A program made the translations under genes and the position numbers. From Octopus sinensis (Eukaryota): a stretch of 64,000 bases of DNA. Location: contig NW_021836176.1 in assembly GCF_006345805.1 (NCBI RefSeq), positions 1-64,000 on the forward strand, written 5' to 3'. Numbering within the stretch: position 1 is the stretch's first letter; each line of letters starts with the position of its first letter. Below the pieces are notes generated by a model. That model did no database searches. It was given only the letters and a program-made list of their open reading frames with translations, and was not told the origin of the DNA. This document shows, one piece after another, positions 17,591 to 63,955 of this stretch.

Positions 17591-17748
17591 CATTGAGTTA
17601 ATCCTGCATTATCTTGTAGCTTTGAGATTTCACTGATGTAATTGTTTGTTATTTTTTTTTTAAAATGGCATTGTAGAGTGAGTGTGAGAAGCTAGATCTG
17701 GCCAGTAGAAAATGTTAACCTGATATGGCCAATTTAAGCACCAAAAAT
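17591..17748 (-). mobile_element. Inverted, diverged 5' part of MITE family 1, abutting the array at a shared TTAA
   Basis: Reverse complement reads ttaa-atttttggtgcttaaattggccatatc...ggccagatctagcttctcacactcactctacaatgccatt...gaaatctcaaagctacaagataatgcaggattaa. Confidence 0.75.
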
Positions 17749-17752
17749 TTAA

Positions 17753-20700
17753 CCCTTTAGCATTTAAACCAACCATATCGTGCTCAAATATCCGACAGGG
17801 TTTACATTTGACCCAGCAAGATCCAGCCTCTCACACCTACCCTACAATGTCATTCTAAAAATAAACAATCACATCATTGAAATCTCAAATCTATGAGATA
17901 ATGCATGATTAATTCAAAACAAGGCCAGATCCATCCTCTCACACCTACCCTACAATGTCATTCTAAAAATAAACAATCACATCATTGAAATCTCAAATCT
18001 ATGAGATAATGCATGATTAATTCAAAACAAGGCCAGATCCATCCTCTCACACCTACCCTACAATGTCATTCTAAAACTAAACAATCACATCATGGAAATC
18101 TCAAATCTATGAGATAATGCATGATTAATTCAAAACAAGGCCAGATCCATCCTCTCACACCTACCCTACAATGTCATTCTAAAAATAAACAATCACATCA
18201 TTGAAATCTCAAAGCTATGAGATAATGCATGATTAATTCAAAACAAGGCCAGTTCCAGCCTCTCACACCTACCCTACAATGTCATGTTAAAAATAAACAA
18301 TCACATCATTGAAATCTCAAAGCTATGAGATAATGCATGATTAATTCAAAACAAGGCCAGATCCATCCTCTCACACCTACCCTACAATGTCATTCTAAAA
18401 ATAAACAATCACATCATTGAAATCTCAAATCTATGAGATAATGCATGATTAATTCAAAACAAGGCCAGATCCATCCTCTCACACCTACCCTACAATGTCA
18501 TTCTAAAAATAAACACATCATCATTGAAATCTCAATCTATGAGATAATGCATGATTATTCAAAACAAGGCCAGATCCATCCTCTCACACCTACCCTACAA
18601 TGTCATTCTAAAACTAAACAATCACATCATGGAAATCTCAAATCTATGAGATAATGCATGATTAATTCAAAACAGGCCAGATCCTCCTCTCACACCTACC
18701 CTACAATGTCATTCTAAAAATAAACAATCACATCATTGAAATCTCAAAGCTATGAGATAATGCATGATTAATTCAAAACAAGGCCAGTTCCAGCCTCTCA
18801 CACCTACCCTACAATGTCATGTTAAAAATAAACAATCACATCATTGAAATCTCAAAGCTATGAGATAATGCATGATTAATTCAAAACAAGGCCAGTTCCA
18901 GCCTCTCACACCTACCCTACAATGTCATGTTAAAATTAAACAATCACATCATTGAAATCTCAAAGCTATGAGATAATGTATGATTAATTCAAAACAAGGC
19001 CAGATCCATCCTCTCACACCTACTCTACAATGTCATTCTAAAAATAAACAATCACATCATTGAAATCTCAAAGATATGAGATAATGCATGATTAATTCAA
19101 AACAAGGCCAGATCCATCCTCTCACACCTACCCTACAATGTCATTCTAAAAATAAACAATCACATCATTGAAATCTCAAATCTATGAGATAATGCATGAT
19201 TAATTCAAAACAAGGCCAGATCCATACTCTCACACCTACCCTACAATGTCATTCTAAAAATAAACAATCACATCATTGAAATCTCAAAGCTATGAGATAA
19301 TGCATGATTAATTCAAAACAAGGCCAGATCCATCCTCTCACACCTACCCTACAATGTCATTCTAAAAATAAACAATCACATCATTGAAATCTCAAATCTA
19401 TGAGATAATGTATGATTAATTCAAAACAAGGCCAGATCCATCCTCTCACACCTACCCTACAATGTCATTCTAAAAATAAACAATCACATCATTGAAATCT
19501 CAAATCTATGAGATAATGCATGATTAATTCAAAACAAGGCCAGATCCATCCTCTCACACCTACCCTACAATGTCATTCTAGAAATAAACAATCACATCAT
19601 GGAAATCTCAAATCTATGAGATAATGCATGATTAATTCAAAACAAGGCCAGATCCATCCTCTCACACCTACCCTACAATGTCATTCTAAAAATAAACAAT
19701 CACATCATTGAAATCTCAAATCTATGAGATAATGCATGATTAATTCAAAACAAGGCCAGATCCAGCCTCTCACACCTACCCTACAATGTCATTCTAGAAA
19801 TAAACAATCACATCATGGAAATCTCAAATCTATGAGATAATGCATGATTAATTCAAAACAAGGCCAGATCCAGCCTCTCACACCTACCCTACAATGTCAT
19901 TCTAAAAATAAACAATCACATCATGGAAATCTCAAATCTATGAGATAATGCATGATTAATTCAAAACAAGGCCAGATCCAGCCTCTCACACCTACCCTAC
20001 AATGTCATTCTAAAAATAAACAATCACATCATGGAAATCTCAAAGCTATGAGATAATGCATGATTAATTCAAAACAAGGCCAGATCCATACTCTCACACC
20101 TACCTCACAATGTCATTCTAAAAATAAATAATCACATCATTGAAATCTCAAAGCTATGAGATAATGCATGATTAATTCAAAACAAGGCTAGATCCAGCCT
20201 CTCTCACCTATCCTACAATGTCCCTCTAAATATAAACAATCCCTACATTTGTGAGATAGTGTGTGGTTAATTTAAAGCAAAGTGAATAAATAAGAATTAT
20301 GTTTGACAGTGTATTCTGAATGCTAAGGAGTTAACCCCGTAGGATTTGAACCAGCAATATGCAGCTGAAATAGTCTGTCTGTTTTATGTTCAAACCAGCT
20401 GTGTCTGGCCCCTCACACCTACCCTAAAAAATGTCATTTTAAAGAGACAAAAAACAATTGTGTGATTGGAATCTCAAATCTGTAAGAAAATGCATGATTA
20501 ATTCAAAACAATGGTAAAATTTAAGCTTTATATTTCACATCATAGAAATCTTCAAGTTACAAGATAATGCATGATTAATTTGAAACAATAGGACTAAATA
20601 CGGACTACATTTGACAGAATAATATGAATTTTATTTCAGTTATGTTCAAACTGCCCAGATCCATCCTCTCACTCATACCCTACAATGTCATTCTTAAAAT

Positions 20701-23700
20701 AAATAATCACATCTTTGAAATCTCAACGCTATGAGATAATGCATGATTAATTCAAAACAAGGCCACATCCTGCCTCTCACACCTACCCTACGATGTCATT
20801 CTCAAATAAAAACAATCACATCATTGAAATCTCAAAGCTATGAGATAATGCATGTTTAATTCAAAAAAAGGCCAGATCCAGCTTCTCACACCTACCCTAC
20901 AATGTCATTCTAAAAATAAACAATCACATCATTGAAATCTCAAAGCTATGAGATAATGCATGATTAATTCAAAACAAGGCCACCTCTTGCCTCTCACACC
21001 TACCCTACGATGTCATTCTCAAATAAAAACAATCACATCATTGAAATCTCAAAGCTATGAGATATTGCATGATTAATTCAAAACAAAGCTTGATCCAGCC
21101 TCTCACACCTACCCTACAATGTCATTCTAAAATAAATAATCACATCATAGAAATCTCAACGCTATGAGATAATGCATGATTAATTCAAAACAAGGCCACC
21201 TCCTGCCTCTCACACCTACCCTACAATGTCATTCTAAAAATAAACAATCACATCATTGAAATCTCAAAGCTGTGAGATAATGCATGATTAATTCAAAACA
21301 AGGCTAGATCAAGCCTCTCACACCTACCCTACAATGTCATTTTAAAATAAACAATCACATCATTGAAATCTCAAAGCTATGAGATAATGCATGATTAATT
21401 CAAAACAAGGCCACCTCCTGCCTCTCACACCTACCCTACAATGTCATTCTAAAAATAAACAATCACATCATTGAAATCTCAAAGCTGTGAGATAATGCAT
21501 GATTAATTCAAAACAAGACCAGATCCTGCCTCTCACACCTACCTCACAATGTCATTCTAAAAATAAACAATCGCATCATTGAAATCTCAAAGCTATGAGA
21601 TAATGCATGATTAATTCAAAACAAGACCAGATCCTGCCTCTCACACCTACCCTACAATGTCATTCTAAAAATAAACAATCACATCATTGAAATCTCAAAC
21701 TGTGAGATAATGCATGATTAATTCAAAACAAGGCCGGATCCTGTCTCTCACACCTACCCTACAATGTCATTCTAAAATAAACAATCTCATCATTGAAATC
21801 TCAAGAAGTGAGATAATGCATGATTAATTCAAAACAAGGCCAGATCCTGTCTCTCACACCAACCCTACAATGTCATTCTAAAAATAAACAATCACATCAT
21901 TGAAATCTCAAAGCTATAAGATAATGCATGATTAATTTAAAACAAGGCCAGATCCTGTCTCTCACACCTACCCTACAATGTCATTCTAAAAATAAACAAT
22001 CTCATCATTGAAATCTCAAAGCTGTGAGATAATGCATGATAAATTCAAAACAAGTCCAGATCCTGTCTCTCACACCTACCCTACAATGTCATTCTAAAAA
22101 TAAACAATCACATCATTGAAATCTCAAAGCTATGAGATAATACATGATTAATTCAAAACAAGGCCAGATCCTGTCTCTCACACCTACCCTACAATGTCAT
22201 TCTAAAAATAAACAATCACATCATTGAAATCTCAAAGCTATGAGATAATGCATGATTAATTCAAAACAAGGCCGGATCCTGTCTCTCACACCTACCCTAC
22301 AATGTCATTCTAAAAATAAACAATCACATCATTGAAATCTCAAAGCTATGAGATAATGCATGATTAATTCAAAACAAGGCCAGATCCTGTCTCTCACACC
22401 TACCCTACAATGTCATTCTAAAAATAAACAATCACATCATTGAAATCTCAAAGCTATGAGATAATGCATGATTAATTCAAAACAAGTCCAGATCCTGTCT
22501 CTCACACCTACCCTACAATGTCATTCTAAAAATAAACAATCTCATCATAGAAATCTCAAAGCTATGAGATAATGCATGATTAATTCAAAACGAGGCCACC
22601 TCCTGCCTCTCACACCTACCCTACAATGTCATTCTAAAATTAAACAATCTCATCATTGAAATATCAAAGCTATGAGATAATGCATGAGTAATTCAAAATA
22701 AGGCCACATCCAGCCTCTCACACCTACCCTACAATGTCATTCTAAAAATAAACAATCACATCATTGAAATCTCAAAGCTATGAGATAATGCATGATTAAT
22801 TCAAAACAAGGCCAGATCCAGCCTCTCACACCTACCCTACAATGTCATTCTAAAAATAAACAATCACATCATTGAAATCTGAAATCTATGAGATAATGCA
22901 TGATTAATTCAAAACAAGGCCAGATCCAGCCTCTCACACCTACCCTACAATGTCATTCTAAAAATAAACAATCACATCATTGAAATCTCAAATCTATGAG
23001 ATAATGCATGATTAATTCAAAACAAGGCCAGATCCATCCTGTCACACCTACCCTACAATGTCATTCTAAAAATAAACAATCACATCATGGAAATCTCAAA
23101 GCTATGAGATAATGCATGATTAATTCAAAACAAGGCCAGATCCATCCTCTCACACCTACCCTACAATGTCATTCTAAAAATAAACAATCACATCATTGAA
23201 ATCTCAAATCTATGAGATAATGCATGATTAATTCAAAACAATGCCACATCCATCCTCTCACACCTACCCTACAATGTCATTCTGAAAATAAACAATCACA
23301 TCATGGAAATCTCAAATCTATGAGATAATGCATGATTAATTCAAAACAAGGCCAGATCCAGCCTCTCACACCTACCCTACAATGTCATTCTAAAAATAAA
23401 CAATCACATCATTGAAATCTCAAAGATATGAGATAATGCATGATTAATTCAAAACAAGGCCAGATCCATCCTCTCACACCTACCCTACAATGTCATTCTA
23501 AAAATAAACAATCACATCATTGAAATCTCAAAGATATGAGATAATGCATGATTAATTCAAAACAAGGCCAGATCCATCCTCTCACACCTACCCTACAATG
23601 TCATTCTAAAAATAAACAATCACATCATTGAAATCTCAAATCTATGAGATAATGCATGATTAATTCAAAACAAGGCCAGATCCAGCCTCTCACACCTACC

Positions 23701-26700
23701 CTACAATGTCATTCTAAAAATAAACAATCACATCATGGAAATCTCAAAGCTATGAGATAATGCATGATTAATTCAAAACAAGGCCAGATCCATCCTCTCA
23801 CACCTACCTCACAATGTCATACTAAAAATAAATAATCACATCATTGAATTCTCAAAGCTATGAGATAATGCATGATTAATTCAAAACAAGGCTAGATCCA
23901 GCCTCTCTCACCTATCCTACAATGTCCCTCTAAATATAAACAATCCCTACATTTGTGAGATAGTGTGTGGTTAATTTAAAGCAAAGTGAATAAATAAGAA
24001 TTATATTTGACAGTGTATTCTGAATGCTAAGGAGTTAACCCCGTAGGATTTGAACCAGCAATATGCAGCTGAAATTGTCTGTCTGTTTTATGTTCAAACC
24101 AGCTGTGTCTGGCCCCTCACACCTACCCCTAAAAAATGTCATTTTAAAGAGACAAAAAACAATTGTGTGATTGGAATCTCAAATCTGTAAGAAAATGCAT
24201 GATTAATTCAAAACAATGGTAAAATTTAAGCTTTATATTTCACATCATAGAAACCTTAAAGTTACAAGATAATGCATGATTAATTTGAAACAAGAGGACT
24301 AAATACGGACTACATTTGACAGAATAATATGAATTTTATTTCAGTTATGTTCAAACTGCCCAGATCCATCCTCTCACTCATACCCTACAATGTCATTCTT
24401 AAAATAAATAATCACATCTTTGAAATCTCAACGCTATGAGATAATGCATGATTAATTCAAAACAAGGCCACATCCTGCCTCTCACACCTACGATGTCATT
24501 CTCAAATAAAAACAATCACATCATTGAAATCTCAAAGCTATGAGATAATGCATGATTAATTCAAAACAAGGCCAGATCCAGCTTCTCACACCTACCCTAC
24601 AATGTCATTCTAAAAATAAACAAGCACATCATTGAAATCTCATAGCTATGAGATAATGCATGATTAATTCAAAACAAGACCGGATCCTGCCTCTCACACC
24701 AACCCTACAATGTCATTCTAAAAATAAATAATCACATCATTGAAATCTCAAAGCTATAAGATAATGCATGATTAATTCAAAACAAGGCCAGATCCATCCT
24801 CTCACACCTACCCTACAATGTCATTCTAAAAATAAACAATCACATCATTGAAATCTCAAAGCTATGAGATAATGCATTATTAATTCAAAACAAGGCCAGA
24901 TCCTGCCTCTCACACTTACCCTACAATGTCATTCTAAAAATAAACAATCACATCATTGAAATCTCAAAGCCGTGAGATAATGCATGATTAATTCAAAACA
25001 AGGCCAGATCCTGCCTCTCACACCTACCCTACAATGTCATTCTAAAAATAAACAATCACATCATTGAAATCACAAAGCTGTGAGATAATGCATGAATAAT
25101 TCAAAACAAGGCCGGATCCTGTCTCTCACACCTACCTCACAATGTCATTCTAAAAATAAACAATCGCATCATTGAAATCTCAAAGCTATGAGATAATGCA
25201 TGATTAATTCAAAACAAGACCAGATCCTGCCTCTCACACCTACCCTACAATGTCATTCTAAAAATAAACAATCACTTCATTGAAATCTCAAAGCTGTGAG
25301 ATAATGCATGATTAATTCAAAACAAGGCCAGATCCTGTCTCTCACACCTACCCTACAATGTCATTCTAAAAATAAACAATCACATAATTGAAATCTCAAA
25401 GCTGTGAGATAATGCATGATTAATTCAAAACAAGGCCAGATCCAGTCTCTCACACCTGCCCTACAATGTCATTCTAAAAATAAACAATCACATCATTGAA
25501 ATCTCAAAGCTGTGAGATAATGCATAATTAATTCAAAACAAGACTAGATCCTGTCTCTCACACCTACCCTACAATGTCATTCTAAAAATAAACAATCACA
25601 TCATTGAAATCTCAAAGCTGTGAGATAATGCATGATTAATTCAAAACAAGGCCGGATCCTGTCTCTCACACCTACCCTACAATGTCATTCTAAAAATAAA
25701 CAATCTCATCATTGAAATCTCAAATCTATGAGATAATGCATGATTAATTCAAAACAAGGCCAGATCCAGCCTCTCACACCTACCCTACAATGTCATTCTA
25801 AAAATAAACAATCACATCATGGAAATCTCAAAGCTATGAGATAATGCATGATTAATTCAAAACAAGGCCAGATCCATCCTCTCACACCTACCTCACAATG
25901 TCATACTAAAAATAAATAATCACATCATTGAAATCTCAAAGCTATGAGATAATGCATGATTAATTCAAAACAAGGCTAGATCCAGCCTCTCTTACCTATC
26001 CTACAATGTCCCTCTAAATATGAACAATCCCTACATTTGTGAGATAGTGTGTGGTTAATTTAAAGCAAAGTGAATAAATAAGAATTATGTTTGACAGTGT
26101 ATTCTGAATGCTAAGGAGTTAACCCCGTAGGATTTGAACCAGCAATATGCAGCTGAAATAGTCTGTCTGTTTAATGTTCAAACCAGCTGTGTCTGGCCCC
26201 TCACACCTACCCCTAAAAAATGTCATTTTAAAGAGACAAAAAACAATTGTGTGATTGGAATCTCAAATCTGTAAGAAAATGCATGATTAATTCAAAACAA
26301 TGGTAAAATTTAAGCTTTATATTTCACATCATAAAAACCTTAAAGTTACAAGATAATGCATGATTAATTTGAAACAATAGGACTAAATACGGACTACATT
26401 TGACAGAATAATATGAATTTTATTTCAGTTATGTTCAAACTGCCCAGATCCATCCTCTCACTCATACCCTACAATGTCATTCTTAAAATAAATAATCACA
26501 TCTTTGAAATCTCAACGCTATGAGATAATGCATGATTAATTCAAAACAAGGCGACATCCTGCCTCTCACACCTACGATGTCATTCTCAAATAAAAACAAT
26601 CACATCATTGAAATCTCAAAGCTATGAGATAATGCATGATTAATTCAAAACAAGGCCAGATCCAGCTTCTCACACCTACCCTACAATGTCATTCTAAAAA

Positions 26701-29700
26701 TAAACAAGCACATCATTGAAATCTCATAGCTATGAGATAATGCATGATTAATTCAAAACAAGACCGGATCCTGCCTCTCACACCAACCCTACAATGTCAT
26801 TCTAAAAATAAATAATCACATCATTGAAATCTCAAAGCTATAAGATAATGCATGATTAATTCAAAACAAGGCCAGATCCATCCTCTCACACCAACCCTAC
26901 AATGTCATTCTAAAAATAAACAATCACATCATTGAAATCTCAAAGCTATGAGATAATGCATGATTAATTCAAAACAAGGCCAGATCCTGCCTCTCACACT
27001 TACCCTACAATGTCATTCTAAAAATAAACAATCACATCATTGAAATCTCAAAGCCGTGAGATAATGCATGATTAATTCAAAACAAGGCCAGATCCTGCCT
27101 CTCACACCTACCCTACAATGTCATTCTAAAAATAAACAATCACATCATTGAAATCACAAAGCTGTGAGATAATGCATGATTAATTCAAAACAAGGCCGGA
27201 TCCTGCCTCTCACACCTACCTCACAATGTCATTCTAAAAATAAACAATCGCATCATTGAAATCTCAAAGCTATGAGATAATGCATGATTAATTCAAAACA
27301 AGACCAGATCCTGCCTCTCACACCTACCCTACAATGTCATTCTAAAAATAAACAATCACTTCATTGAAATCTCAAAGCTGTGAGATAATGCATGATTAAT
27401 TCAAAACAAGGCCAGATCCTGTCTCTCACACCTACCCTACAATGTCATTCTAAAAATAAACAATCACATCATTGAAATCTCAAAGCTGTGAGATAATGCA
27501 TGATTAATTCAAAACAAGGCCAGATCCTGTCTCTCACACCTGCCCTACAATGTCATTCTAAAAATAACAATCACATCATTGAAATCTCAAAGCTGTGAGA
27601 TAATGCATAATTAATTCAAAACAAGACTAGATCCTGTCTCTCACACCTACCCTACAATGTCATTCTAAAAATAAACAATCACATCATTGAAATCTCAAAG
27701 CTGTGAGATAATGCATGATTAATTCAAAACAAGGCCGGATCCTGTCTCTCACACCTACCCTACAATGTCATTCTAAAAATAAACAATCTCATCATTGAAA
27801 TCTCAAGACTGTGAGATAATGCATGATTAATTCAAAACAAGGCCAGATCCTGTCTCTCACACCAACCCTTCAATGTCATTCTAAAAATAAACAATCACAT
27901 CATTGAAATCTCAAAGCTGTGAGATAATGCATGATTAATTCAAAACAAGGCCAGATCCTGTCTCTCACACCAACCCTACAATGTCATTCTAAAAATAAAC
28001 AATCACATCATTGAAATCTCAAAGCTGTGAGATAATGCATGACTAATTCAAAACAAGGCCAGATCCTGTCTCTCACACCAACCCTACAATGTCATTCTAA
28101 AAATAAACAATCACATCATTGAAATCTCAAAGCTGTGAGATAATGCATGATTAATTCAAAACAAGGCCAGATCCTGTCTCTCACACCAACCCTACAATGT
28201 CATTCTAAAAATAAACAATCACATCATTGAAATCTCAAAGCTGTGAGATAATGCATGACTAATTCAAAACAAGGCCAGATCCTGTCTCTCACACCAACCC
28301 TACAATGTCATTCTAAAAATAAACAATCACATCATTGAAATCTCAAAGCTGTGAGATAATGCATGACTAATTCAAAACAAGGCCAGATCCTGTCTCTCAC
28401 ACCAACCCTACAATGTCATTCTAAAAATAAACAATCACATCATTGAAATCTCAAAGCTGTGAGATAATGCATGACTAATTCAAAACAAGGCCAGATCCTG
28501 TCTCTCACACCAACCCTACAATGTCATTCTAAAAATAAACAATCACATCATTGAAATCTCAAAGCTATAAGATAATGCATGATTAATTCAAAACAAGGCC
28601 AGATCATGCCTCTCACACCTACCCTACAATGTCATTCTAAAAATAAACAATCACATCATTGAAATCTCAAAGCTATGAGATAATGCATGATTAATTCAAA
28701 ACAAGGCCAGCTCCTGTCTCTCACACCTACCCTACAATGTCATTCTAAAAATAAACAATCTCATCATTGAAATCTCAAAGCTGTGAGATAATGCATGATT
28801 AATTCAAAACAAGTCCAGATCCTGTCTCTCACACCTACCCTACAATGTCATTCAAAAAATAAACAATCACATCATTGAAATCTCAAAGCTATGAGATAAT
28901 GCATGATTAATTCAAAACAAGGCCAGATCCTGCCTCTCACACCCACCCTACAATGTCATTCTTAAAATAAACAATTTCATCATAGAAATCTCAAAGCTAT
29001 GAGATAATGCATGATTAATTCAAAACGAGGCCACCTCCTGCCTCTCACACCTACCCTACAATGTCATTCTAAAATTAAACAATCTCATCATTGAAATCTC
29101 AAAGCTATGAGATAATGCATGAGTAATTCAAAACAAGGCCGGATCCTGTCTCTCACACCTACCCTACAATGTCATTCTAAAATTAAACAATCGCATCATT
29201 GAAATCTCAAAGCTATGAGATAATGCATGATTAATTCAAAACAAGGCCAGATCCTGCCTATCACACCTATCTCACAATGTCATTCTAAAAATAAACAATC
29301 ACATCATTGAAATCTCAAAGCTATGAGATAATGCATGATTAATTCAAAACAAGGCTAGATCCAGCCTCTCACACCTACTCTACAATGTCATTCTAAAAAT
29401 AAACAATCACATCATGGAAATCTCAAAGCTATGAGATAATGCATGATTAATTCAAAACAAGGCCAGATCCATCCTCTCACACCTACCTCACAATGTCATA
29501 CTAAAAATAAATAATCACATCATTGAAATCTCAAAGCAATGATATAAGCATGATTAATGCATTAATTCAAACAAGGCTATCCAGCCTCTCTCACCTATCC
29601 TACAATGTCCCTCTAAATATAAACAATCCCTACATTGTGAGATAGTGTGTGGTTAATTTAAAGCAAAGTGAATAAATAAGATTATGTTTGACAGTGTATT

Positions 29701-32700
29701 CTGAATGCTAAGGAGTTAACCCCGTAGGATTTGAACCAGCAATATGCAGCTGAAATAGTCTGTCTGTTTTATGTTCAAACCAGCTGTGTCTGGCCCCTCA
29801 CACCTACCCCTAAAAACGTCATTTTAAAGAGACAAAAAACAATTGTGTGATTGGAATCTCAAATCTGTAAGAAAATGCATGATTAATTCAAAACAATGGT
29901 AAAATTTAAGCTTTATATTTCACATCATAGACACCTTAAAGTTACAAGATAATGCATGATTAATTTGAAACAATAGGACTAAATACGGACTACATATGAC
30001 AGAATAATATGAATTTTATTTCAGTTATGTTCAAACTGCCCAGATCCATCCTCTCACTCATACCCTACAATGTCATTCTTAAAATAAATAATCACATCTT
30101 TGAAATCTCAACGCTATGAGATAATGCATGATTAATTCAAAACAAGGCCACATCCTGCCTCTCACACCTACGATGTCATTCTCAAATAAAAACAATCACA
30201 TCATTGAAATCTCAAAGCTATGAGATAATGCATGATTAATTCAAAACAGGCCAGATCCAGCTTCTCACACCTACCCTACAATGTCATTCTAAAAATAAAC
30301 AAGCACATCATTGAAATCTCATAGCTATGAGATAATGCATGATTAATTCAAAACAAACCGGATCCTGCCTCTCACACCTACCCTACAATGTCATACTAAA
30401 AATAAATAATCACATCATTGAAATCTCAAGCTATAAGATAATGCATGATTATTCAAAACAAGGCCAGATCCATCCTCTCACCCTACCCTACAATGTCATT
30501 CTAAAAATAAACAATCACATCATTGAAATCTCAAAGCTATGAGATAATGCATGATTAATTCAAAACAAGGCCAGATCCTGCCTCTCACACTTACCCTACA
30601 ATGTCATTCTAAAAATAAACAATCACATCATTGAAATCTCAAAGCCGTGAGATAATGCATGATTAATTCAAAACAAGGCCAGATCCTGCCTCTCACACCT
30701 ACCCTACAATGTCATTCTAAAAATAAAGAATCACATCATTGAAATCTCAAAGCTGTGAGATAATGCATGATTAATTCAAAACAAGGCCGGATCCTGTCTC
30801 TCACACCTACCTCACAATGTCATTCTAAAAATAAACAATCGCATCATTGAAATCTCAAAGCTATGAGATAATGCATGATTAATTCAAAACAAGACCAGAT
30901 CCTGCCTCTCACACCTACCCTACAATGTCATTCTAAAAATAAACAATCACTTCATTGAAATCTCAAAGCTGTGAGATAATGCATGATTAATTCAAAACAA
31001 GGCCAGATCCTGTCTCTCACACCTACCCTACAATGTCATTCTAAAAATAAACAATCACATCATTGAAATCTCAAAGCTGTGAGATAATGCATGATTAATT
31101 CAAAACAAGGCCAGATCCTGTCTCTCACACCTGCCCTACAATGTCATTCTAAAAATAAACAATCACATCATTGAAATCTCAAAGCTGTGAGATAATGCAT
31201 AATTAATTCAAAACAAGACTAGATCCTGTCTCTCACACCTACCCTACAATGTCATTCTAAAAATAAACAATCACATCATTGAAATCTCAAAGCTGTGAGA
31301 TAATGCATGATTAATTCAAAACAAGGTCGGATCCTGTCTCTCACACCTACCCTACAATGTCATTCTAAAAATAAACAATCTCATCATTGAAATCTCAAGA
31401 CTGTGAGATAATGCATGATTAATTCAAAACAAGGCCAGATCCTGTCTCTCACACCAACCCTACAATGTCATTCTAAAAATAAACAATCACATCATTGAAA
31501 TCTCAAAGCTGTGAGATAATGCATGATTAATTCAAAACAAGACCAGATCCTGTCTCTCACACCAACCCTACAATGTCATTCTAAAAATAAACAATCACAT
31601 CATTGAAATCTCAAAGCTGTGAGATAATGCATGACTAATTCAAAACAAGGCCAGATCCTGTCTCTCACACCAACCCTACAATGTCATTCTAAAAATAAAC
31701 AATCACATCATTGAAATCTCAAAGCTGTGAGATAATGCATTTAATTCAAAACAAGGCCAGATCCTGTCTCTCACACCACCCTACAATGTCATTCTAAAAA
31801 TAAACAATCACATCATTGAATCTCAAAGCTGTGAGATAAGGCATGACTAATTCAAAACAAGGCCAGATCCTGTCTCTCACACCAACCCTACAATGTCATT
31901 CTAAAAATAAACAATCACATCATTGAAATCTCAAAGCTGTGAGATAATGCATGACTAATTCAAAACAAGGCCAGATCCTGTCTCTCACACCAACCCTACA
32001 ATGTCATTCTAAAAATAAACAATCACATCATTGAAATCTCAAAGCTGTGAGATAATGCATGACTAATTCAAAACAAGGCCAGATCCTGTCTCTCACACCA
32101 ACCCTACAATGTCATTCTAAAAATAAACAATCACATCATTGAAATCTCAAAGCTATAAGATAATGCATGATTAATTCAAAACAAGGCCAGACCATGCCTC
32201 TCACACGTACCCTACAATGTCATTCTAAAAATAAACAATCACATCTTTGAAATCTCAAAGCTATGAGATAATGCATGATTAATTCAAAACAAGGCCAGAT
32301 CCTGTCTCTCACACCTACCCTACAATGTCAATCTAAAAATAAACAATCACATCATGGAAATCTCAAAGCTATGAGATAATGCATGATTAATTCAAAACAA
32401 GGCCAGATCCATCCTCTCACACCTACCTCACAATGTCATACTAAAAATAAATAATCACATCATTGAAATCTCAAAGCTATGAGATAATGCATGATTAATT
32501 CAAAACAAGGCTAGATCCAGCCTCTCTCACCTATCCTACAATGTCCCTCTAAATATAAACAATCCCTACATTTGTGAGATAGTGTGTGGTTAATTTAAAG
32601 CAAAGTAAAATAAGAATTATATTTGACAGTGTATTCTGAATGCTAAGGAGTTAACCCCGAGGATTTGAACCAGCAATATGCAGCTGAAATTGTCTGCTGT

Positions 32701-35700
32701 TTATGTTCAAACCAGCTGTGTCTGGCCCCTCACACCTACCCCTAAAAAATGTCATTTAAAGAGACAAAAAAATTGTGTGATTGGAATCTCAAATCTGTAA
32801 GAAAATGCATGATTAATTCAAAACAATGGTAAAATTTAAGCTTTATATTTCACATCATAGAAACCTTAAAGTTACAAGATAATGCATGATTAATTTGAAA
32901 ACAAGAGGACTAAATACGGACTACATTTGACAGAATAATATGAATTTTATTTCAGTTATGTTCAAACTGCCCAGATCCATCCTCTCACTCATACCCTACA
33001 ATGTCATTCTCAAATAAAAACAATCACATCATTGAAATCTCAAAGCTATGAGATAATGCATGATTAATTCAAAACAAGGCCAGATCCAGCTTCTCACACT
33101 ACCCTACAATGTCATTCAAAAATAACAAGCAATCATTGAAATCTCAAGCTATGAGATAATGCATGATTAATTCAAAACAAGACCGGATCCTGTCTCTCAC
33201 ACCTACCCTACAATGTCATTCTAAAAATAAATAATCACATCATTGAAATCTCAAAGCTATAAGATAATGCATGATTAATTCAAAACAAGGCCAGATCCAT
33301 CCTCTCACACCTACCCTACAATGTCATTCTAAAAATAAACAATCACATCATTGAAATCTCAAAGCTATGAGATAATGCATGATTAATTCAAAACAAGGCC
33401 AGATCCTGCCTCTCACACTTACCCTACAATGTCATTCTAAAAATAAACAATCACATCATTGAAATCTCAAAGCCGTGAGATAATGCATGATTAATTCAAA
33501 ACAAGGCCAGATCCTGCCTCTCACACCTACCCTACAATGTCATTCTAAAAATAAACAATCACATCATTGAAATCTCAAAGCTGTGAGATAATGCATGATT
33601 AATTCAAAACAAGGCCGGATCCTGCTCTCACACCTACCTACAATGTCATTCTAAAAATAAACAATCGCATCATTGAAATCTCAAAGCTATGAGATAATGC
33701 ATGATTAATTCAAAACAGACCAGATCCTGCCTCTCACACCTACCCTACAATGTCATTCTAAAAATAAACAATCACTTCATTGAAATCTCAAAGCTGTGAG
33801 ATAATGCATGATTAATTCAAAACAAGGCCAGATCCTGTCTCTCACACCTACCAACAATGTCATTCTAAAAATAAACAATCACATCATTGAAATCTCAAAG
33901 CTGTGAGATAATGCATGATTAATTCAAAACAAGGCCGGATCCTGTCTCTCACACCTACCCTACAATGTCATTCTAAAAATAAACAATCTCATCATTGAAA
34001 TCTCAAGACTGTGAGATAATGCATGATTAATTCAAACAAGGCCAGATCCTGTCTCTCACACCAACCTACAATGTCATTCTAAAATAAACAATCACATCAT
34101 TGAATCTCAAAGCTGTGAGATAATGCATGACTAATTCAAACAAGGCAGATCCTGTCTCTCACACCAACCCTACAATGTCATTCTAAAAATAAACATCATC
34201 ACATCATTGAAATCTCAAAGCTGTGAGATAATGCATGATAATTCAAAACAAGGCCAGATCCTGTCTCTCACACCAACCCTACAATGTCATTCTAAAAATA
34301 AACAATCACATCATTGAAATCTCAAAGCTATAAGATAATGCATGATTAATTCAAAACAAGGCCAGATCCAGCCTCTCACACCTACCCTACAATGTCATTC
34401 TAAAAATAAACAATCACATCATTGAAATCTCAAAGCTATGAGATAATGCATGATTAATTCAAAACAAGGCCAGATCCTGTCTCTCACACCTACCTACAAT
34501 GTCATTCTAAAAATAAACAATCTCATCATTGAAATCTCAAAGCTGTGAGATAATGCATGATTAATTCAAAAACAAGGTCAGATCCTGTCTCTCACACCTA
34601 CCCTACAATGTCATTCTAAAAATAAACAATCACATCATTGAAATCTCAAAGCTATGAGATAATGCATGATTAATTCAAACAAGGCCAGATCCTGCCTCTA
34701 CACCCCACCCTACAATGTCATTCTAAAATAAACAATTTCACTCATAGAAATCTCAAAGCTATGAGATAATGCATGATTAATTCAAAACGAGGCCACCTCC
34801 TGCCTCTCACACCTACCCTACAATGTCATTCTAAAATTAAACAATCTCATCATTGAAATCTCAAAGCTATGAGATAATGCATGAGTAATTCAAAACAAGG
34901 CCGGATCCTGTCTCTCACACCTACCCTACAATGACATTCTAAAATTAAACAATCGCATCATTGAAATCTCAAAGCTATGAGATAATGCATGATTAATTCA
35001 AAACAAGGCCAGATCCTGCCTATCAGACCTATCTCACAATGTCATTCTAAAAATAAACAATCACATCATTGAAATCTCAAAGCTATGAGATAATGCATGA
35101 TTAATTCAAAATAAGGCCCATCCAGCCTCTCACACCTACCCTACAATGTCATTCTAAAAATAAATAATCACATCTTTCAAATCTCAACGCTATGAGACAA
35201 TGCATGATTAATTCAAAACAAGGCCAGGTCCAGCCTCTCACACCCACCCTATAATGTCATTTTAAAATAAACAATCACATCATTGAAATCTCAAGCTATG
35301 AGATAATGCATGATTAATTCAAAACAAGGCTAGATCAAGCCTCTCACACCCACCCTACAATGTCATTCTAAAAATAAACAATCACATCATTGAAATCTCA
35401 AAGCTATGAGATAATGCATGATTAATTCAAACAAGGCAGATCCAGCCTCTCACACCTACCCTACAATGTCATTCTAAAATAAACAATCACATCATTGAAA
35501 TCTCAAAGCTATGAGATAATGCATGATTAATTCAAAACAAGGCCAGATCCAGCCTCTCACACCTACCCTACAATGTCATTCTAAAAATAAACAATCGCAT
35601 CATTGAAATCTCAAAGCTATGAGATAATGCATGATTAATTCAAAATAAGGCCACATCCAGCCTCTCACACCTACCCTACAATGTCATTCTAAAAATAAAC

Positions 35701-38610
35701 AATCACATCATTGAAATCTCAATGCTATGAGATAATGCATGATTAATTCAAAACAAGGCCAGATCCTGCATCTCACACCTGCCCTACAATGTCATTTTAA
35801 AATAAACAATCGCATCATTGAAATCTCAAGACTGTGAGATAATGCATGATTAATTCAAAACAAGGCCACATCCAGCCTGTCACACCTACCCTACAATGTC
35901 ATTCTAAAAATAAACAATCACATCATTGAAATCTCAAAGCTGTGAGATAATGCATGATTAATACAAAACAAGGCCAGATCCACCCTCTCACACCTACCCT
36001 ACAATGTCATTCTAAAAATAAACAATCACATCATTGAAATCTCAATGCTATGAGATAATGCATGATTAATTCAAAACAAGGCCAGATCCTGCCTCTCACA
36101 CCTGCCCTACAATATCATTCTAAAAATAAACAATCACATCATTGAAATCTCAATGCTATGAGATAATGCATGATTAATTCAAAACAAGGCCAGATCCTGC
36201 CTCTCACACCTATCCTACAATGTCATTCTAAAAATAAATAATCACATCATTGAAATCTCAATGCTATGAGATAATGCATGATTAATTCAAAACAAGGCCA
36301 GATCCAGCCTCTCACACCTACCCTACAATGTCATTCTAAAAATAAACAATCACATCATTGAAATCTCAATGCTATGAGATAATGCATGATTAATTCAAAA
36401 CAAGGCCAGATCCTGCCTCTCACACCTGCCCTACAATGTCATTTTAAAATAAACAATCGCATCATTGAAATCTCAAGACTGTGAGATAATGCATGATTAA
36501 TTCAAAACAAGGCCAGATCCAGCCTCTCACACCTACCCTAAAATGTCATTCTAAAAATAAACAATCACATCATTGAAATCTCAAAGCTGTGAGATAATGC
36601 ATGATTAATTCAAAACAAGGCCAGATCCAGCCTCTCACACCTACCCTACAATGTCATTCTAAAAATAAATAATCACATCATTGAAATCACAATGCTATGA
36701 AATCTCAATGCTATGATTAATTCAAAACAAGGCTAGATCAAGCCTCTCACACCCACCCTACAATGTCATTTTAAAAATAATCACATTATTTAAATCTCAA
36801 AGCTATGAGATAATGCAGGATTAATTGAAAACAAGGCCAGATCCAGCCTCTCACACATACCCTACAATGTCATTCTAAATATAAACAATCACATTATTTA
36901 AATCTCAAATCTATGAGATAATGCATGATTAATTCAAAACAAGGCCAGATCCAGCCTCTCACACCTACCCTACAATGTCATTCTAAAAATAAATAATCAC
37001 ATCATTGAAATCTCAAAGCTATGAGATAATGCATGATTAATTCAAAACAATGCCACATCCAGCCTCTCACACCTACCCTACAATGTCATTCTAAAAATAA
37101 ACAATCACATCATTGAAATCTCAATGCTATGAGATAATGCATGATTAATTCAAAACAATGCCACATCCAGCCTCTCACACCTACCCTACAATGTCATTCT
37201 AAAAATAAACAATCACATCATTGAAATCTCAATGCTATGAGATAATGCATGATTAATTCAAAACAAGGCCAGATCCTGCCTCTCACACCTACCCTACAAT
37301 GTCATTCTAAAAATAAACAATCACATCATTGAAATCTCAATGCTATGAGATAATGCATGATTAATTCAAAACAATGCCACATCCAGCCTCTCACACCTAC
37401 CCTACAATGTCATTCTAAAAATAAACAATCACATCATTGAAATCTCAATACTATGAGATAATGCATGATTAATTCAAAACAAGGCCAGATCCTGCCTCTC
37501 ACACCTACCCTACAATGTCATTCTAAAAATAAACAATCACATCATTGAAATCTCAATGCTATGAGATAATGCATGATTAATTCAAAAGAAGGCCAGATCC
37601 TGCCTCTCACACCTACCCTACAATGTCATTCTAAAAATAAACAATCACATCATTGAAATCTCAATGCTATGAGATAATGCATGATTAATTCAAAACAATG
37701 CCACATCCAGCCTCTCACACCTACACTACAATGTCATTCGAAAAATAAACAATCACATCATTGAAATCTCAATGCTATGAGATAATGCATGATTAATTCA
37801 AAACAATGCCACATCCAGCCTCTCACACCTACCCTACAATGTCATTCTAAAAATAAACAATCACATCATTGAAATCTCAATGCTATGAGATAATGCATGA
37901 TTAATTCAAAACAAGGCCAGATCCTGCCTCTCACACCTACCCTACAATGTCATGCTAAAAATAAACAATCACATCATTGAAATCTCAATGCTATGAGATA
38001 ATGCATGATTAATTCAAAACAATGCCACATCCAGCGTCTCACACCTACCCTTCAATGTCATTCTAAAAATAAACAATCACATCATTGAAATCTCAATGCT
38101 ATAAGATAATGCATGATTAATTCAAAACAATGCCACATCCAGCCTCTCACACCTACCCTACAATGTCATTCTAAAAATAAACAACCACGTCATTGAAATC
38201 TCAATTCTATGAGATAATGCATGATTAATTCAAAACAATGCCACATCCAGCCTCTCACACCTACCCTACAATGTCATTCTAAAAATAAACAATCACATCA
38301 TTGAAATCTCAATGCTATGAGATAATGCATGATTAATTCAAAACAAGGCCAGATCCAGCTTCTCACACCTACCCTACAATGTCATTCTAAAAATAAACAA
38401 TCACATCATTGAAATCTCAATGCTATGAGATAATGCATGATTAATTCAAAACAAGACCGGACCCTGCCTCTCACACCTACCCTACAATGTCATTCTAAAA
38501 ATAAACAATCACATCATTGAAATCTCAAAGCTATGAGATAATGCATGATTAATTCAAAACAATGTGAATAAATAAGCATTGCATTGGATAGAATATTCTA
38601 AATGCTAAAG
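17753..38610 (+). repeat. MITE-derived satellite array: ~170 copies of a 108-bp monomer with five internal MITE end-to-start junction blocks
   Basis: Monomer AGGCCAGATCCAGCCTCTCACACCTACCCTACAATGTCATTCTAAAAATAAACAATCACATCATTGAAATCTCAAAGCTATGAGATAATGCATGATTAATTCAAAACA (starts 17921 and 18029, spacing 108). Begins TTAA|ccctttagcatt. Junction TTAAs at 20331, 24035, 26119, 29716 and 32651. Ends with subterminal gtgaataaataagcatt...aatgctaaag. Copy number is an estimate from length. Confidence 0.95.
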
Positions 38611-38910
38611 TTATTCTCTCAAAATATTCTAATTAATTTGAGTTCAAACTGGTCAGATCCAGCCTCTTACATTTCTCCTATGACGTCATTCTGGAAAAGA
38701 AAATGGAATTTGTAACTGATTCACAAAGCTATGAGATAATGCATGAATAATTCAAAACAATGAACGTAAAGAAAGGTCACACTTGCCAAGATAATCTGAA
38801 TGCTAAAGTTATTCTACCAAAATATTGTTTTATGTTCAAACCAGCCAAACCCAGCCTCTCACACCCAACAATGCCTTTGTAAAAACAATCACATGATTAA
38901 AATCTCAAAT
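38611..38910 (+). repeat. Degenerate MITE-1 units continuing the array
   Basis: Two diverged monomers joined by atgctaaag|ttattct..caaaatatt at 38610 and ~38808; cut off by a SINE-A at 38912. Confidence 0.75.
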
Positions 38911-38911
38911 A

Positions 38912-39081
38912 GGCGCAGGAGTGGCTGTGTGGTAAGTAGCTTGCTAACCAACCACATGGTTCCGGGTTCAGTCCCACTGTGTGGCACCTTGGGCAAGTGT
39001 CTTCTGCTTTAGCCCCGGGCCGACCAATGCCTTGTGAGTGGATTTGTAGACGGAAACTGAAAGAAGCCTGTCGTATATATG

Positions 39082-39141
<60 letters not shown>

Positions 39142-39371
39142 CACAGGGGTGGCTGTGTGGTAAGTAGCTTGCTAACCAGCCACATGGTTCCGGGTTCAGT
39201 CCCACTGTGTGGCACCTTGGGCAAGTGTCTTCTGCTATATCCCCGGGCCGACCAATGCCTTGTGAGTGGATTTGGTAGACGGAAACTGAAAGAAGCCCGT
39301 CGTATATATGTATGTATATATATGTGTGTGTGTCTGTGTTTGTATCCCTAGCATTGCTTGACAACCGATGC
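38912..39371 (+). mobile_element. SINE family A tandem: 5' half (38912-39139) plus 3'-truncated copy (39140-39371)
   Basis: Two heads separated by (TA)n. Confidence 0.88.
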
Positions 39372-56421: not shown

Positions 56422-56479
<58 letters not shown>

Positions 56480-62949: not shown

Positions 62950-63099
62950 ATACCTGTAAGGCTAGTCTTTTGTATTTTATAATAATAATAATAATAATAA
63001 TAATATTGTGTACAGTGCTCAGGTGCACTACAACTCATCTAAAGTGTATATATAATCAGGTGTAGTTTCGGCGGATTTCGGAAAGCATGAGGGCCTTAA

Positions 63100-63764
63100 C
63101 CCTTTAGCATTCAAACCGGCCATATCCGGCCAAAATATTTAACCTGTTTTATATTGAAACTGACCAGATCTCACCTCTCACCTCAGCCCTACCATGTCAT
63201 TCTAAAACTAAAAAATCACATCACTGAAATATCTAAACTACAAGATAATGCATGATTAATTCAAAAGAATATAAATCAAAATCAAACCGAATCAAAATAG
63301 ATGAACATCAATGGAATTTGTATCTTTGTGGTACCAGTGCCGGTGGCACATAAGAAAGCCATCCGAACGTGGCTGTAGCCAGTACCGCATTGACTGGCCT
63401 CTGTGCTGTGGGCACGTAACAAACACCATCCAATCATGGCCGTCTGCCAGCCTCGTCTGGCACCTGTGTCGGTGGCACATAAAAAACACCATCCGAGCGT
63501 GGCCGTTCGCCAGCCCCATCTGGCACCTGTGTCGGTGGCACATAAAATCACCCACTACACTCTCGGAGTGGTTGGCGTTAGGAGGGGCATCCAGCTGTAG
63601 AAACACTGCCAGATCTGACTGGCCTGGTGCAGCCTTCGGGCTCCCTAGACCCCAGTTGAACCGTCCAACCCATACTAGCATGGAAAGCGGACGTTAAACG
63701 ATGATGATGATGATGATAAACAAACAAACATCACATTTGATAGAATAATCTGAACACTAAAGGG
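63100..63764 (+). mobile_element. piggyBac-type MITE family 1, single-monomer copy (contains a nested RTE 3' UTR)
   Basis: TTAA TSD at 63096-63099 and 63765-63768. TIR ccctttagcattca / tgaacactaaaggg (12/14). Empty site gagggccTTAAaggatgcag at 62751-62770. One copy of the 108-bp monomer lies at ~63165-63270. Confidence 0.92.
63277..63716 (+). mobile_element. RTE-LINE 3' UTR copy nested in the MITE
   Basis: Modules gtgtcggtggcacataaaa, terminus gcatggaaagcggacgttaaacgatgatgatg. Confidence 0.85.
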
Positions 63765-63955
63765 TTAAAGGATGCAGTGTCATGGCAGTTAACAACTGAT
63801 GCAGGCAGTTTATTCCATGCTTCAGCAACTCTTCCCAGGATTCCATTCAGCCATAATGTATAAACAAACCTATCTTTCTAAATAGATTGCTAATTGGCAC
63901 TCTATAGAGAATTCATACAGTGCTTGTCAAACGGAATGATTCTATTCTTTTGTAG

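What the first reader, a model, noticed from the sequence alone, without database searches (positions are those of the whole stretch)
20200..33000. The five 'spacers' in the satellite are fossil transposon tail-TTAA-head junctions
Seen: each ~450-bp block contains tgaatgctaaggag-TTAA-ccccgtaggattt (TTAA at 20331, 24035, 26119, 29716, 32651). This is a right TIR (12/14 to consensus) and a left TIR (10/13) sharing one TTAA. It is followed by a whole diverged MITE and a second, TIR-deleted end-to-start fusion. Inference: the array is a concatemer of MITEs whose internal repeats expanded, and the junction block was then multiplied as a higher-order repeat. Internal TIRs could let a transposase excise or reshuffle sub-arrays.
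Basis: partly seen in the sequence, partly recalled or inferred. Interest (0 to 1): 0.8.

Follow-up and report, generated by a model that had tools for sequence, protein, structure and literature searches.

The report
Fossil transposon junctions inside a satellite
Five near-identical 467-bp interruptions in a 21-kb satellite array are relics of the place where two small piggyBac-type transposons (MITEs) sat tail-to-head sharing one TTAA, later copied along with neighbouring satellite units; this is a clear example of an already known route from transposon to satellite DNA.

Summary
A 108-bp satellite of about 190 monomers (17819-38562) is interrupted five times by a 467-bp block. Each block holds GAATGCTAAGGAG-TTAA-CCCCGTAGGATTT, with TTAA at 20331, 24035, 26119, 29716 and 32651. 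The fifth copy has a 1-bp deletion.

The sequence either side of the TTAA is significantly homologous to the tail and head of a TTAA-flanked MITE with CCCTTTAGCATT termini. Other copies lie in the window: a solo copy at 63096-63768, the left end of the array at 17749, and relics at 2443-2513, 17593-17748 and 38563-38909. The satellite monomer is this MITE's internal core (86% identity).

Each block also holds two further MITE-MITE boundaries with deleted termini. The five blocks are 96-99% identical and sit in colinear 2.1-3.7 kb higher-order units, so one ancestral junction was multiplied by segmental duplication.

Shown: the homology, the single shared TTAA, and common descent of the blocks. 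Inferred: how the first tandem formed. I favour a second insertion into the flanking TTAA followed by unequal exchange; rolling-circle copying of a circularised element is the rival.

Nothing supports the idea that the degenerate internal termini are still used by a transposase. This is a new member of a known kind (MITE-derived satellite with a target site kept in the tandem junction). Interest is modest.

The parts
17593..17748 (-). Inverted, truncated MITE copy (degenerate head plus one core). Its head runs in register up to the TTAA at 17749, giving a head-TTAA-head arrangement with the array.
   Evidence: The core is 79% identical to the satellite consensus on the minus strand. The head matches the solo head at 27/45 positions in register, against a random 11.8 +/- 2.9. 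A 1-3 bp indel at the terminus cannot be excluded.
17749..17818 (+). Left boundary of the array: TTAA (17749-17752), then the MITE head of element A with a consensus terminal repeat CCCTTTAGCATTT (17753-17765).
   Evidence: Zero-mismatch hit to TTAACCCTTTAGCATTT. The head is 77% identical to the solo head.
17819..20189 (+). Sub-array 1: 22 monomers of the 108-bp satellite, the 'AT' variant at positions 7-8. With the head at 17753 and the tail at 20281-20330, this forms a structurally complete tandem-repeat MITE with TTAA at both ends (17749-20334).
20190..20656 (+). Block 1. Degenerate last monomer 20190-20280. Tail A with terminal repeat 20281-20330. TTAA 20331-20334. Head B with terminal repeat 20335-20410. 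Core B 20411-20511. 23-bp tail-start-like spacer 20512-20534. Half core 20535-20588. Tail C lacking its terminal repeat 20589-20629. Head D remnant lacking its terminal repeat 20630-20656.
   Evidence: Feature map; homology.
23894..24361 (+). Block 2, same anatomy, TTAA at 24035-24038.
25978..26445 (+). Block 3, same anatomy, TTAA at 26119-26122.
29577..30041 (+). Block 4, same anatomy, TTAA at 29716-29719. It carries several private 1-bp indels.
32513..32972 (+). Block 5, same anatomy, TTAA at 32651-32654. It is the most diverged copy (96.3-97.5% to the others) and has a 1-bp deletion in the head terminus.
20657..32512 (+). The satellite runs between blocks (20657-23893, 24362-25977, 26446-29576, 30042-32512). 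They are colinear higher-order units of 19-34 monomer equivalents, made of 'TG'-type monomers, and each ends in 2-11 'AT/pre'-type monomers before the next block.
   Evidence: Ordered variant strings. Long alignments at shifts of 3591 and 2088 bp are 96.3% identical, against about 92.7% between monomers in general.
32973..38562 (+). Last satellite run. The first ~20 monomers are colinear with the preceding units. A hybrid monomer at 35118-35225 marks a sixth unit without a block. A distinct right-end monomer subfamily follows (AATGC at positions 69-73).
38563..38909 (+). Right end of the array: two more whole-MITE units joined by identical partly deleted junctions (..AATGCTAAAG|TTATTCT..). Tail E1 38563-38610, head remnant 38611-38654, core 38655-38760, tail E2 38761-38808, head remnant and partial core 38809-38909. 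The structure is then cut by SINE insertions, and no terminal right-hand repeat is found.
63096..63768 (+). Solo reference MITE. TTAA at both ends. An 18-nt inverted repeat including the TTAA, 89% complementary. One core at 63166-63269, 86% identical to the satellite consensus. An unrelated repeat is inserted at about 63305-63715.
2443..2513 (+). Tail of a third, degenerate dispersed MITE copy, ending ..GAACACTAAAGGG-TTAA.

Best explanation
The array is a satellite born from a non-autonomous, piggyBac-type MITE with a TTAA target and CCCTTTAGCATT...AATGCTAAAGGG termini. The five 'spacers' are copies of one fossil stretch in which several MITE units once lay head-to-tail.

Steps shown:
(a) The 108-bp monomer is the MITE's internal core.
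(b) The array starts with an intact TTAA plus head and ends in tail relics.
(c) Each block holds a tail, a single TTAA and a head, followed by further MITE-MITE boundaries whose termini are deleted.
(d) The blocks share one ancestor. They were spread recently by segmental, higher-order duplication of 2-3.7 kb units, through out-of-register exchange between monomers.

Steps inferred:
(e) The first tandem arose when a second copy inserted into the TTAA flanking a resident copy. Because piggyBac-type insertion duplicates TTAA, this leaves exactly one TTAA between the two ends.
(f) Unequal exchange then expanded the dimer into a short array of whole MITEs.
(g) The TIR-TTAA-TIR junctions, originally 30-bp palindromes, were mostly lost to deletions.
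(h) The core-only 108-bp repeat arose by joining the core end to the last 4 nt of the head. The short direct repeat TTCAAA(A)C is present at both breakpoints. The repeat then expanded.

Today the blocks are passive passengers with no sign of function or mobility.
For: - Motif and coordinates.
- Extended tail and head homology, with z of 5-12.
- TTAA on all scorable MITE ends, an 18-nt terminal inverted repeat, and a CCCTTT terminus. This matches the piggyBac hallmark of a CC[C/T]T terminus plus TTAA, and the coral piggyBac and CMITE termini CCCTTTAACGCCC / CCCTTTAAGCCCTA (PMC2872659). Kolobok, the other TTAA superfamily, has AGGRR termini instead (PMC6004289).
- Core equals monomer, 84-87% identity.
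- Block identity of 96.3-99.0%, with shared derived features.
- Colinear monomer variants between blocks.
- Three spatially separate monomer subfamilies bounded by blocks.
- Three junction types sharing one orientation.
- An independent head-TTAA-head junction at 17749, which rolling-circle copying cannot produce. It shows a second landing on a flanking TTAA.
- The satellite junction TTCAAAACAA|GGCC|AGATCC is core end plus head end.
- The double-insertion model predicts a target site kept within the tandem junction, later expansion, and frequent terminal deletions, as seen for hobo (PMC5932611).
Against: - No sequence from outside the window could be obtained, so the MITE 'consensus' rests on about 4 dispersed or terminal copies plus the array.
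- TTAA as a true target-site duplication is inferred. No empty site is available.
- The MITE units inside the array are no closer to each other (69-77%) than to dispersed copies (67-82%). The order of events and the dimer-forming mechanism therefore cannot be resolved.
- The terminus of the inverted copy at 17749 is very degenerate (6/13 in the terminal repeat), and its exact end is inferred from the in-register alignment only.
- No transposase is in the window.
- Assembly errors in a 21-kb satellite cannot be excluded.
Confidence: 0.8

Rival explanations
1. Circle and rolling-circle origin. An excised MITE, whose ends carry complementary TTAA overhangs after piggyBac-type excision, self-ligated into a circle with one TTAA between tail and head. 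The circle was copied by rolling-circle replication, and the concatemer reintegrated. Core expansion and higher-order duplication followed as in the main model.
For: A single TTAA between intact-length ends is exactly the predicted circle junction. At least 5-6 MITE units lie in one orientation. Rolling-circle replication is an accepted alternative model for tandem DNA transposons such as Bari1 (PMC5932611; review PMC12628747).
Against: The head-TTAA-head junction at 17749 in the same locus cannot be made this way and points to insertion into flanking TTAA sites. The two right-end junctions share one deletion, so they arose by tandem duplication of an already damaged junction rather than directly from a circle. 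The units are not closer to each other than to dispersed copies. No circular DNA data are available.
Confidence: 0.15
2. Satellite first. A pre-existing 108-bp satellite was captured as a single monomer by a MITE, and the blocks are later MITE insertions into the satellite rather than relics of its origin.
For: Capture of a pre-existing tandem repeat by a MITE has been proposed for Xenopus miDNA4 (review PMC12628747). Every monomer offers a TTAA target at position 91.
Against: An insertion into a monomer TTAA would read satellite-TTAA-head...tail-TTAA-satellite. The blocks instead read tail-TTAA-head, and the monomers next to them grade into MITE tail and head at the normal core boundaries rather than at position 91. 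The array itself begins with a MITE head and ends with MITE tails. The inter-monomer junction contains the last 4 nt of the MITE head.
Confidence: 0.04
3. Live internal ends. The TIR-TTAA-TIR junctions are still recognised by a piggyBac-type transposase, which excises or reshuffles sub-arrays and so drives the variable block spacing.
For: Element A (17749-20334) has TTAA and recognisable ends on both sides. piggyBac families with recent insertions are reported in Octopus vulgaris (PMC13282606), if the window is from an octopod.
Against: The junction termini are mutated (tail ...AAGGAG instead of ...AAAGGG; head CCCCGTAGGATTT) and are identical in all five copies. No inverted repeat is detectable in the block. 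Spacing differences are whole-monomer indels with colinear variant order. The block-less unit has a hybrid monomer typical of homologous exchange. There are no excision footprints or precise TTAA-only sites.
Confidence: 0.04
4. Assembly artefact. A single block was multiplied by mis-assembly of a long satellite.
For: Satellite arrays are error-prone to assemble. Blocks 4 and 5 carry many 1-bp indels that could be read errors.
Against: Each block has private substitutions. Three variants are shared only by blocks 2 and 5. Each block sits in a different monomer context with a different unit length.
Confidence: 0.05

Closest known systems
Tandem transposon dimers by double insertion, expanding into arrays (McGurk & Barbash 2018, PMC5932611; hobo, R1)
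   Same: Head-to-tail elements with exactly one target-site copy kept between the termini. Later expansion by unequal exchange. Many junctions carry deleted termini.
   Different: Here the element is a roughly 250-bp TTAA-type MITE rather than a full hobo or R1. The junction is ancient and degenerate rather than a young polymorphism. The main amplified unit became the internal core, not the whole element.
Tandem-repeat-containing MITEs and MITE-derived satellites (Xenopus Xmix/Xstir; bivalve pearl and DTC84; Drosophila Tetris and DINE-TR1; review PMC12628747)
   Same: An internal MITE segment is amplified into tandem arrays. Single-core mobile copies, composite MITE-plus-array forms and long arrays coexist. 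Short direct repeats lie at the core boundaries.
   Different: Xmix/Xstir belongs to Kolobok (AGGRR termini, PMC6004289), whereas this element has CCCTTT termini of piggyBac type. I found no cephalopod example in the searchable literature. Those descriptions, as far as I read them, do not report retention of an intact TIR-TSD-TIR junction inside a higher-order unit.
Coral CMITEs, piggyBac-derived MITEs that form tandem arrays of full-size elements (Wang et al. 2010, PMC2872659)
   Same: TTAA target. CCCTTT... termini of 13-14 bp. Small non-coding elements. Tandem arrays of whole MITEs.
   Different: CMITE arrays were short and were attributed to replication slippage. No core-only satellite and no higher-order multiplication were described. 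There is no sequence similarity beyond the terminal motif.
Higher-order repeat organisation of satellites (for example primate alpha satellite)
   Same: Multi-monomer units are more alike (96-99%) than the monomers within a unit (about 93%). Copy number changes by unequal exchange. Monomers at array edges are diverged.
   Different: Only five to six units, of unequal length (19-34 monomers). The unit is marked by a non-satellite transposon relic.

Membership tests
piggyBac-superfamily MITE | Flanked by TTAA (target-site duplication) | tested here: met
   TTAA is at both ends of the solo copy (63096, 63765), at the array's left end (17749), at the tail relic (2510) and at J1. That it is a duplication is inferred, because no empty site is available.
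piggyBac-superfamily MITE | 12-19 bp terminal inverted repeats beginning CC[C/T]T | tested here: met
   The termini are CCCTTTAGCATT[T/C] and GAA[T/C][G/A]CTAAAGGG. The inverted repeat is 18 nt including the TTAA and 89% complementary. The motif definition and similar coral termini come from PMC2872659.
piggyBac-superfamily MITE | Short, non-coding, multiple dispersed copies | tested here: met
   The element is about 250-280 bp without the inserted repeat. There are no ORFs of note. Three dispersed copies plus the array lie in 64 kb. The genome-wide copy number was not testable.
piggyBac-superfamily MITE | Matching autonomous piggyBac element, or mobilisation by its transposase | not testable with these tools
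   No transposase ORF is in the window. No host-genome collection was available.
Kolobok (T2-type) MITE | TTAA target with an AGGRR / RR terminal motif | tested here: not met
   The termini start CCC, not AG. The motif is taken from PMC6004289.
MITE-derived satellite / tandem-repeat MITE | Satellite monomer homologous to the internal part of the MITE | tested here: met
   The solo core is 86.4% identical to the satellite consensus, the inverted copy 86.9%, core B 84.2% and core E1 84.0%.
MITE-derived satellite / tandem-repeat MITE | Arrays bounded by MITE ends, with a variable core number among copies | tested here: met
   The left end has TTAA plus a terminal repeat. Tails lie at 20281, 38563 and 38761. 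Core counts are 1 (solo, inverted copy), 1.5 (element B), 22 (element A) and longer runs.
Tandem TE junction by double insertion | Two full-length ends in head-to-tail order separated by exactly one target-site copy | tested here: met
   The tail alignment ends at ..AAGGAG|TTAA and the head alignment starts at TTAA|CCCC, in register with the other copies. This feature does not distinguish double insertion from a circle junction.
Higher-order repeat satellite | Units more similar to each other than the monomers within a unit, with a colinear order of monomer variants | tested here: met
   Blocks are 96.3-99.0% identical. 4.6-kb and 3.7-kb alignments are 96.3% identical at shifts of 3591 and 2088 bp, against about 92.7% between monomers.

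The most novel reading that the evidence does not exclude
The single-TTAA tail-head junction is the scar of a circularised piggyBac-type excision product, formed when the element's own TTAA overhangs self-ligated and the circle was then amplified by rolling-circle replication. On this reading, cut-and-paste TTAA transposons can seed satellites through extrachromosomal circles. Alternatively, such junctions remain weak transposase substrates that release sub-arrays as circles.
Probability: 0.12. Interest if true: 0.6.

Novelty: new member of a known kind. Interest (0 to 1): 0.3.

Why it matters
The locus preserves several stages of a transposon-to-satellite transition:
- a single-core mobile MITE;
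- a complete MITE with 22 cores and TTAA at both ends;
- a tail-TTAA-head junction;
- a graded series of junction deletions;
- a core-only satellite;
- recent higher-order duplication.

Such intermediates are usually erased, so the locus is a good teaching and annotation case. It is also a concrete handle for asking how often TTAA transposons land next to resident copies. I found no description of a MITE-derived satellite in a cephalopod in the searchable literature. The taxon is my own reading of the SINE content and is not verified. The mechanism is not conceptually new, and no cellular function is indicated.

Tried and rejected
- **Copies elsewhere.** Exact-pattern scans with ATAATGCATGATTAATTCAAAA found nothing in the viral or metagenome collections. 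The perfect junction GCTAAAGGGTTAACCCTTTAGC found nothing in metagenomes.
- **Protein route to public assemblies.** Four exact look-ups of ORFs from the block, the array and a flanking region were not on record. One homology search with concatenated short ORFs from the array and blocks gave no hit at E <= 0.001. The genome collection on offer holds only bacteria and archaea, so I did not use it.
- **Literature sequence search.** A search for the termini and monomer found only unrelated primers. A search for the SINE sequences, meant to confirm the taxon, found nothing.
- **Transposase in the window.** None is present; all long ORFs are low-complexity.
- **Rfam and tRNA scans.** Both were empty.
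- **Degenerate tail upstream of the solo MITE.** I tested whether this would be a third junction. It was not significant against four of five tails, so I rejected it.
- **Hairpin at J1.** The present junction is not a stable DNA hairpin (z -0.64).
- **3-monomer higher-order repeat at the right end of the array.** Identity was 97.5% at a shift of 3 monomers, against 97.2% and 96.9% at shifts of 1 and 2. This is not convincing, so I do not claim it.
- **23-bp spacer as the start of a tail.** It matches in register at 15/23, 14/23 and 12/23. I keep it only as tentative.


Full report
**Context**

The window is AT-rich eukaryotic DNA, crowded with SINE-like repeats, microsatellites and tandem repeats. 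From memory, the SINEs resemble those of octopods. I could not verify the taxon, so it is only a lead. No coding gene, tRNA or Rfam family is detectable.

**Checking the observation**

Tandem Repeats Finder reports one 108-bp array from 17819 to 38562: 191 copies with 85% matches.

A shorter core finds the fifth copy, which has a 1-bp deletion. No shuffle produced a match.
- TTAA lies exactly at the five stated coordinates.
- Mapping the monomer consensus back onto the window shows that the five blocks are the only large interruptions of the array, and that all have the same internal layout.
- The tail-side and head-side matches to the terminal repeats seen elsewhere in the window are 12/14 and 10/13, as stated.

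**The MITE family in the window**

- A solo element lies at 63096-63768. It has TTAA on both sides and an 18-nt terminal inverted repeat including the TTAA (89% complementary). It carries one internal core, 63166-63269, that is 86% identical to the satellite consensus, and an unrelated repeat is inserted in it.
- The array begins with TTAA-CCCTTTAGCATTT and a 66-nt head that is 77% identical to the solo head.
- A tail relic ends ..CTAAAGGG-TTAA at 2513.
- An inverted, truncated copy lies at 17593-17748.
- The terminus CCCTTT plus TTAA fits the piggyBac hallmark (CC[C/T]T, TIRs of 12-19 bp, TTAA). It resembles coral piggyBac and CMITE termini (PMC2872659).
- It does not fit Kolobok, the other TTAA-targeting superfamily, whose ends are AGGRR (PMC6004289).
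- No transposase is in the window.

**Anatomy of a block (block 1; the others are identical in layout)**

| Coordinates | Feature |
|---|---|
| 20190-20280 | degenerate last monomer |
| 20281-20330 | tail A, ending in the mutated terminal repeat GAATGCTAAGGAG |
| 20331-20334 | TTAA |
| 20335-20410 | head B, starting CCCCGTAGGATTT |
| 20411-20511 | core B (84% to the satellite consensus in global alignment) |
| 20512-20534 | 23-bp spacer |
| 20535-20588 | half core (monomer positions 51-104) |
| 20589-20629 | tail C without its terminal repeat |
| 20630-20656 | last 27 nt of a head (D), after which the regular satellite resumes |

- Head B scores z of about 10-12 against the two other heads. 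Tail A scores z of about 5-12 against four other tails. At most 1 of 2000 shuffles did as well.
- In the multiple alignment, the tail homology ends and the head homology begins exactly at the TTAA.
- The J2 boundary (tail C | head D) is the same kind of junction with about 50 bp missing around the termini.
- The 23-bp spacer matches the first 23 nt of tails in register at 15/23, 14/23 and 12/23. It is possibly a third boundary with a still larger deletion. This is tentative.
- At the right end of the array, two more whole-MITE units are joined by identical junctions ..AATGCTAAAG|TTATTCT.., lacking about 29 bp. That junction was therefore itself duplicated.

At least three independent junction types thus point to an ancestral run of whole MITEs in one orientation.

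**Common descent and higher-order multiplication**

- Over about 800 aligned bases, the blocks are 96.3-99.0% identical. Most differences are private to one copy. Three variants are shared only by blocks 2 and 5, and five set block 1 apart.
- All five share the same mutated termini, the same breakpoints and the same spacer.
- Writing each monomer as a string of its informative positions shows the same order of variant monomers after blocks 2, 3, 4 and 5, and partly after block 1. The units differ by runs of whole monomers, for example six extra '..T.TA...G.C' monomers in units 3 and 4 and a 14-monomer gap in unit 2.
- Long alignments at shifts of 3591 and 2088 bp reach 96.3%, against about 92.7% for monomers in general.
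- Monomers left of a block are the 'AT' type (95.8% alike among themselves). Those right of it are the 'TG' type. The far right end has a third type. The blocks therefore separate differently homogenised sub-arrays.
- After the fifth unit, the variant order continues to monomer type 27 (35011). It is followed by a hybrid monomer (35118) whose 3' half carries the signature of the first post-block monomer. This is a sixth unit from which the block is absent, with the mark of homologous exchange.

**Origin of the 108-bp unit**

In MITE copies, the core is preceded by a head ending ..GTTCAAACTG[G/C]CC and followed by ..ATTCAAAACAA|TG.. The satellite's inter-monomer junction reads ..ATTCAAAACAA|GGCC|AGATCC. 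That is the core end, then the last four bases of the head, then the core start. The short direct repeat TTCAAA(A)C lies at both breakpoints.

This fits two routes. One is slippage or unequal exchange within a single MITE. The other is a deletion that removes tail, TTAA and head between neighbouring MITEs. The partly deleted junctions J2 and E1/E2 look like intermediates of the second route. This step is inference.

**How the first tandem formed**

piggyBac-type insertion duplicates TTAA. A second copy landing in the TTAA next to a resident copy therefore yields exactly tail-TTAA-head. This is the 'double insertion' model, which predicts a target site kept inside the tandem junction, later expansion by unequal exchange, and frequent terminal deletions (PMC5932611).

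The main rival is circularisation plus rolling-circle replication (same paper; review PMC12628747).

One in-window fact leans toward double insertion. The inverted copy at 17593-17748 aligns in register with other heads right up to the TTAA at 17749 (27/45 against a random 11.8 +/- 2.9). This is a head-TTAA-head junction that rolling-circle copying cannot make.

On the other hand, the array's MITE units are no closer to one another than to dispersed copies, so age has erased most of the signal. I put double insertion followed by unequal exchange at roughly three times the likelihood of the circle route.

**Live internal ends**

- The junction termini are mutated and identical in all five copies.
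- No inverted repeat is detectable in the block.
- The junction is not a stable hairpin now.
- Length differences are whole monomers.
- The block-less unit shows recombination, not excision.

I consider transposase-driven reshuffling unlikely, at about 4%.

**Comparison with what is known**

MITE-derived satellites and tandem-repeat MITEs are well documented. Examples are Xenopus Xmix/Xstir, miDNA4, bivalve pearl and DTC84, and Drosophila Tetris and DINE-TR1 (PMC12628747; PMC6004289). Tandem arrays of whole piggyBac-type MITEs are known in corals (PMC2872659). Target-site-containing tandem junctions are known in Drosophila (PMC5932611).

A recent Octopus vulgaris repeat annotation lists piggyBac and MITE families but does not mention satellites (PMC13282606). 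My searches found no cephalopod example.

The locus is therefore a new member of a known kind. Its value lies in the unusually complete series of intermediates.

**Limits**

No sequence outside the window could be obtained. Family-wide statements, the target-duplication status of TTAA, the taxon and the correctness of the assembly all remain unverified.

Noticed in passing
17593-17752: An inverted, truncated MITE copy meets the first MITE of the array at the same TTAA, giving a head-TTAA-head arrangement. This looks like a second, independent case of an element landing on a resident copy's flanking TTAA. It also puts core-derived arms of 61-64 nt, 76-85% complementary, in inverted orientation at the array edge.
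   Followed up: partly
35011-35225: A hybrid monomer (35118) carries the 3' signature of the first post-block monomer directly after a type-27 monomer. This is a sixth higher-order unit without a block, consistent with block loss or bypass by homologous exchange between flanking monomers.
   Followed up: partly
1833-1893 and 2281-2341: A 61-bp direct repeat (95% identical) flanks a minus-strand tRNA-like SINE. The SINE is inserted in a third, degenerate MITE copy (about 1780-2513). This is unusually long for a SINE target-site duplication.
   Followed up: no
50737-51721; 47774-48111; 38897-39340: SINE copies with (TA)n tracts are themselves arranged in tandem, with up to about 5 copies at a period of about 190 bp. 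This is another transposon-to-tandem-repeat conversion in the same window.
   Followed up: no
10105-11209 and 52919-53285: Tandem repeats with periods of 155, 292 and 184 bp, made of another tRNA-related SINE-like unit (..GGGTTCAAATCCCGCCGAGGTCGAC..).
   Followed up: no
1-1297: A strongly strand-skewed CT-rich tandem repeat: 162-bp unit, 8 copies, 93% matches. It runs off the left end of the window.
   Followed up: no
43049-44110 and 55230-56478: (TA)n-rich tracts of more than 1 kb. The 42-44 kb stretch has only 18% G+C.
   Followed up: no
17819-38562: Every monomer contains a TTAA at position 91 (GATTAATTC), and the array holds 217 TTAA sites in all. Even so, no MITE insertion is seen within any monomer.
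   Followed up: partly
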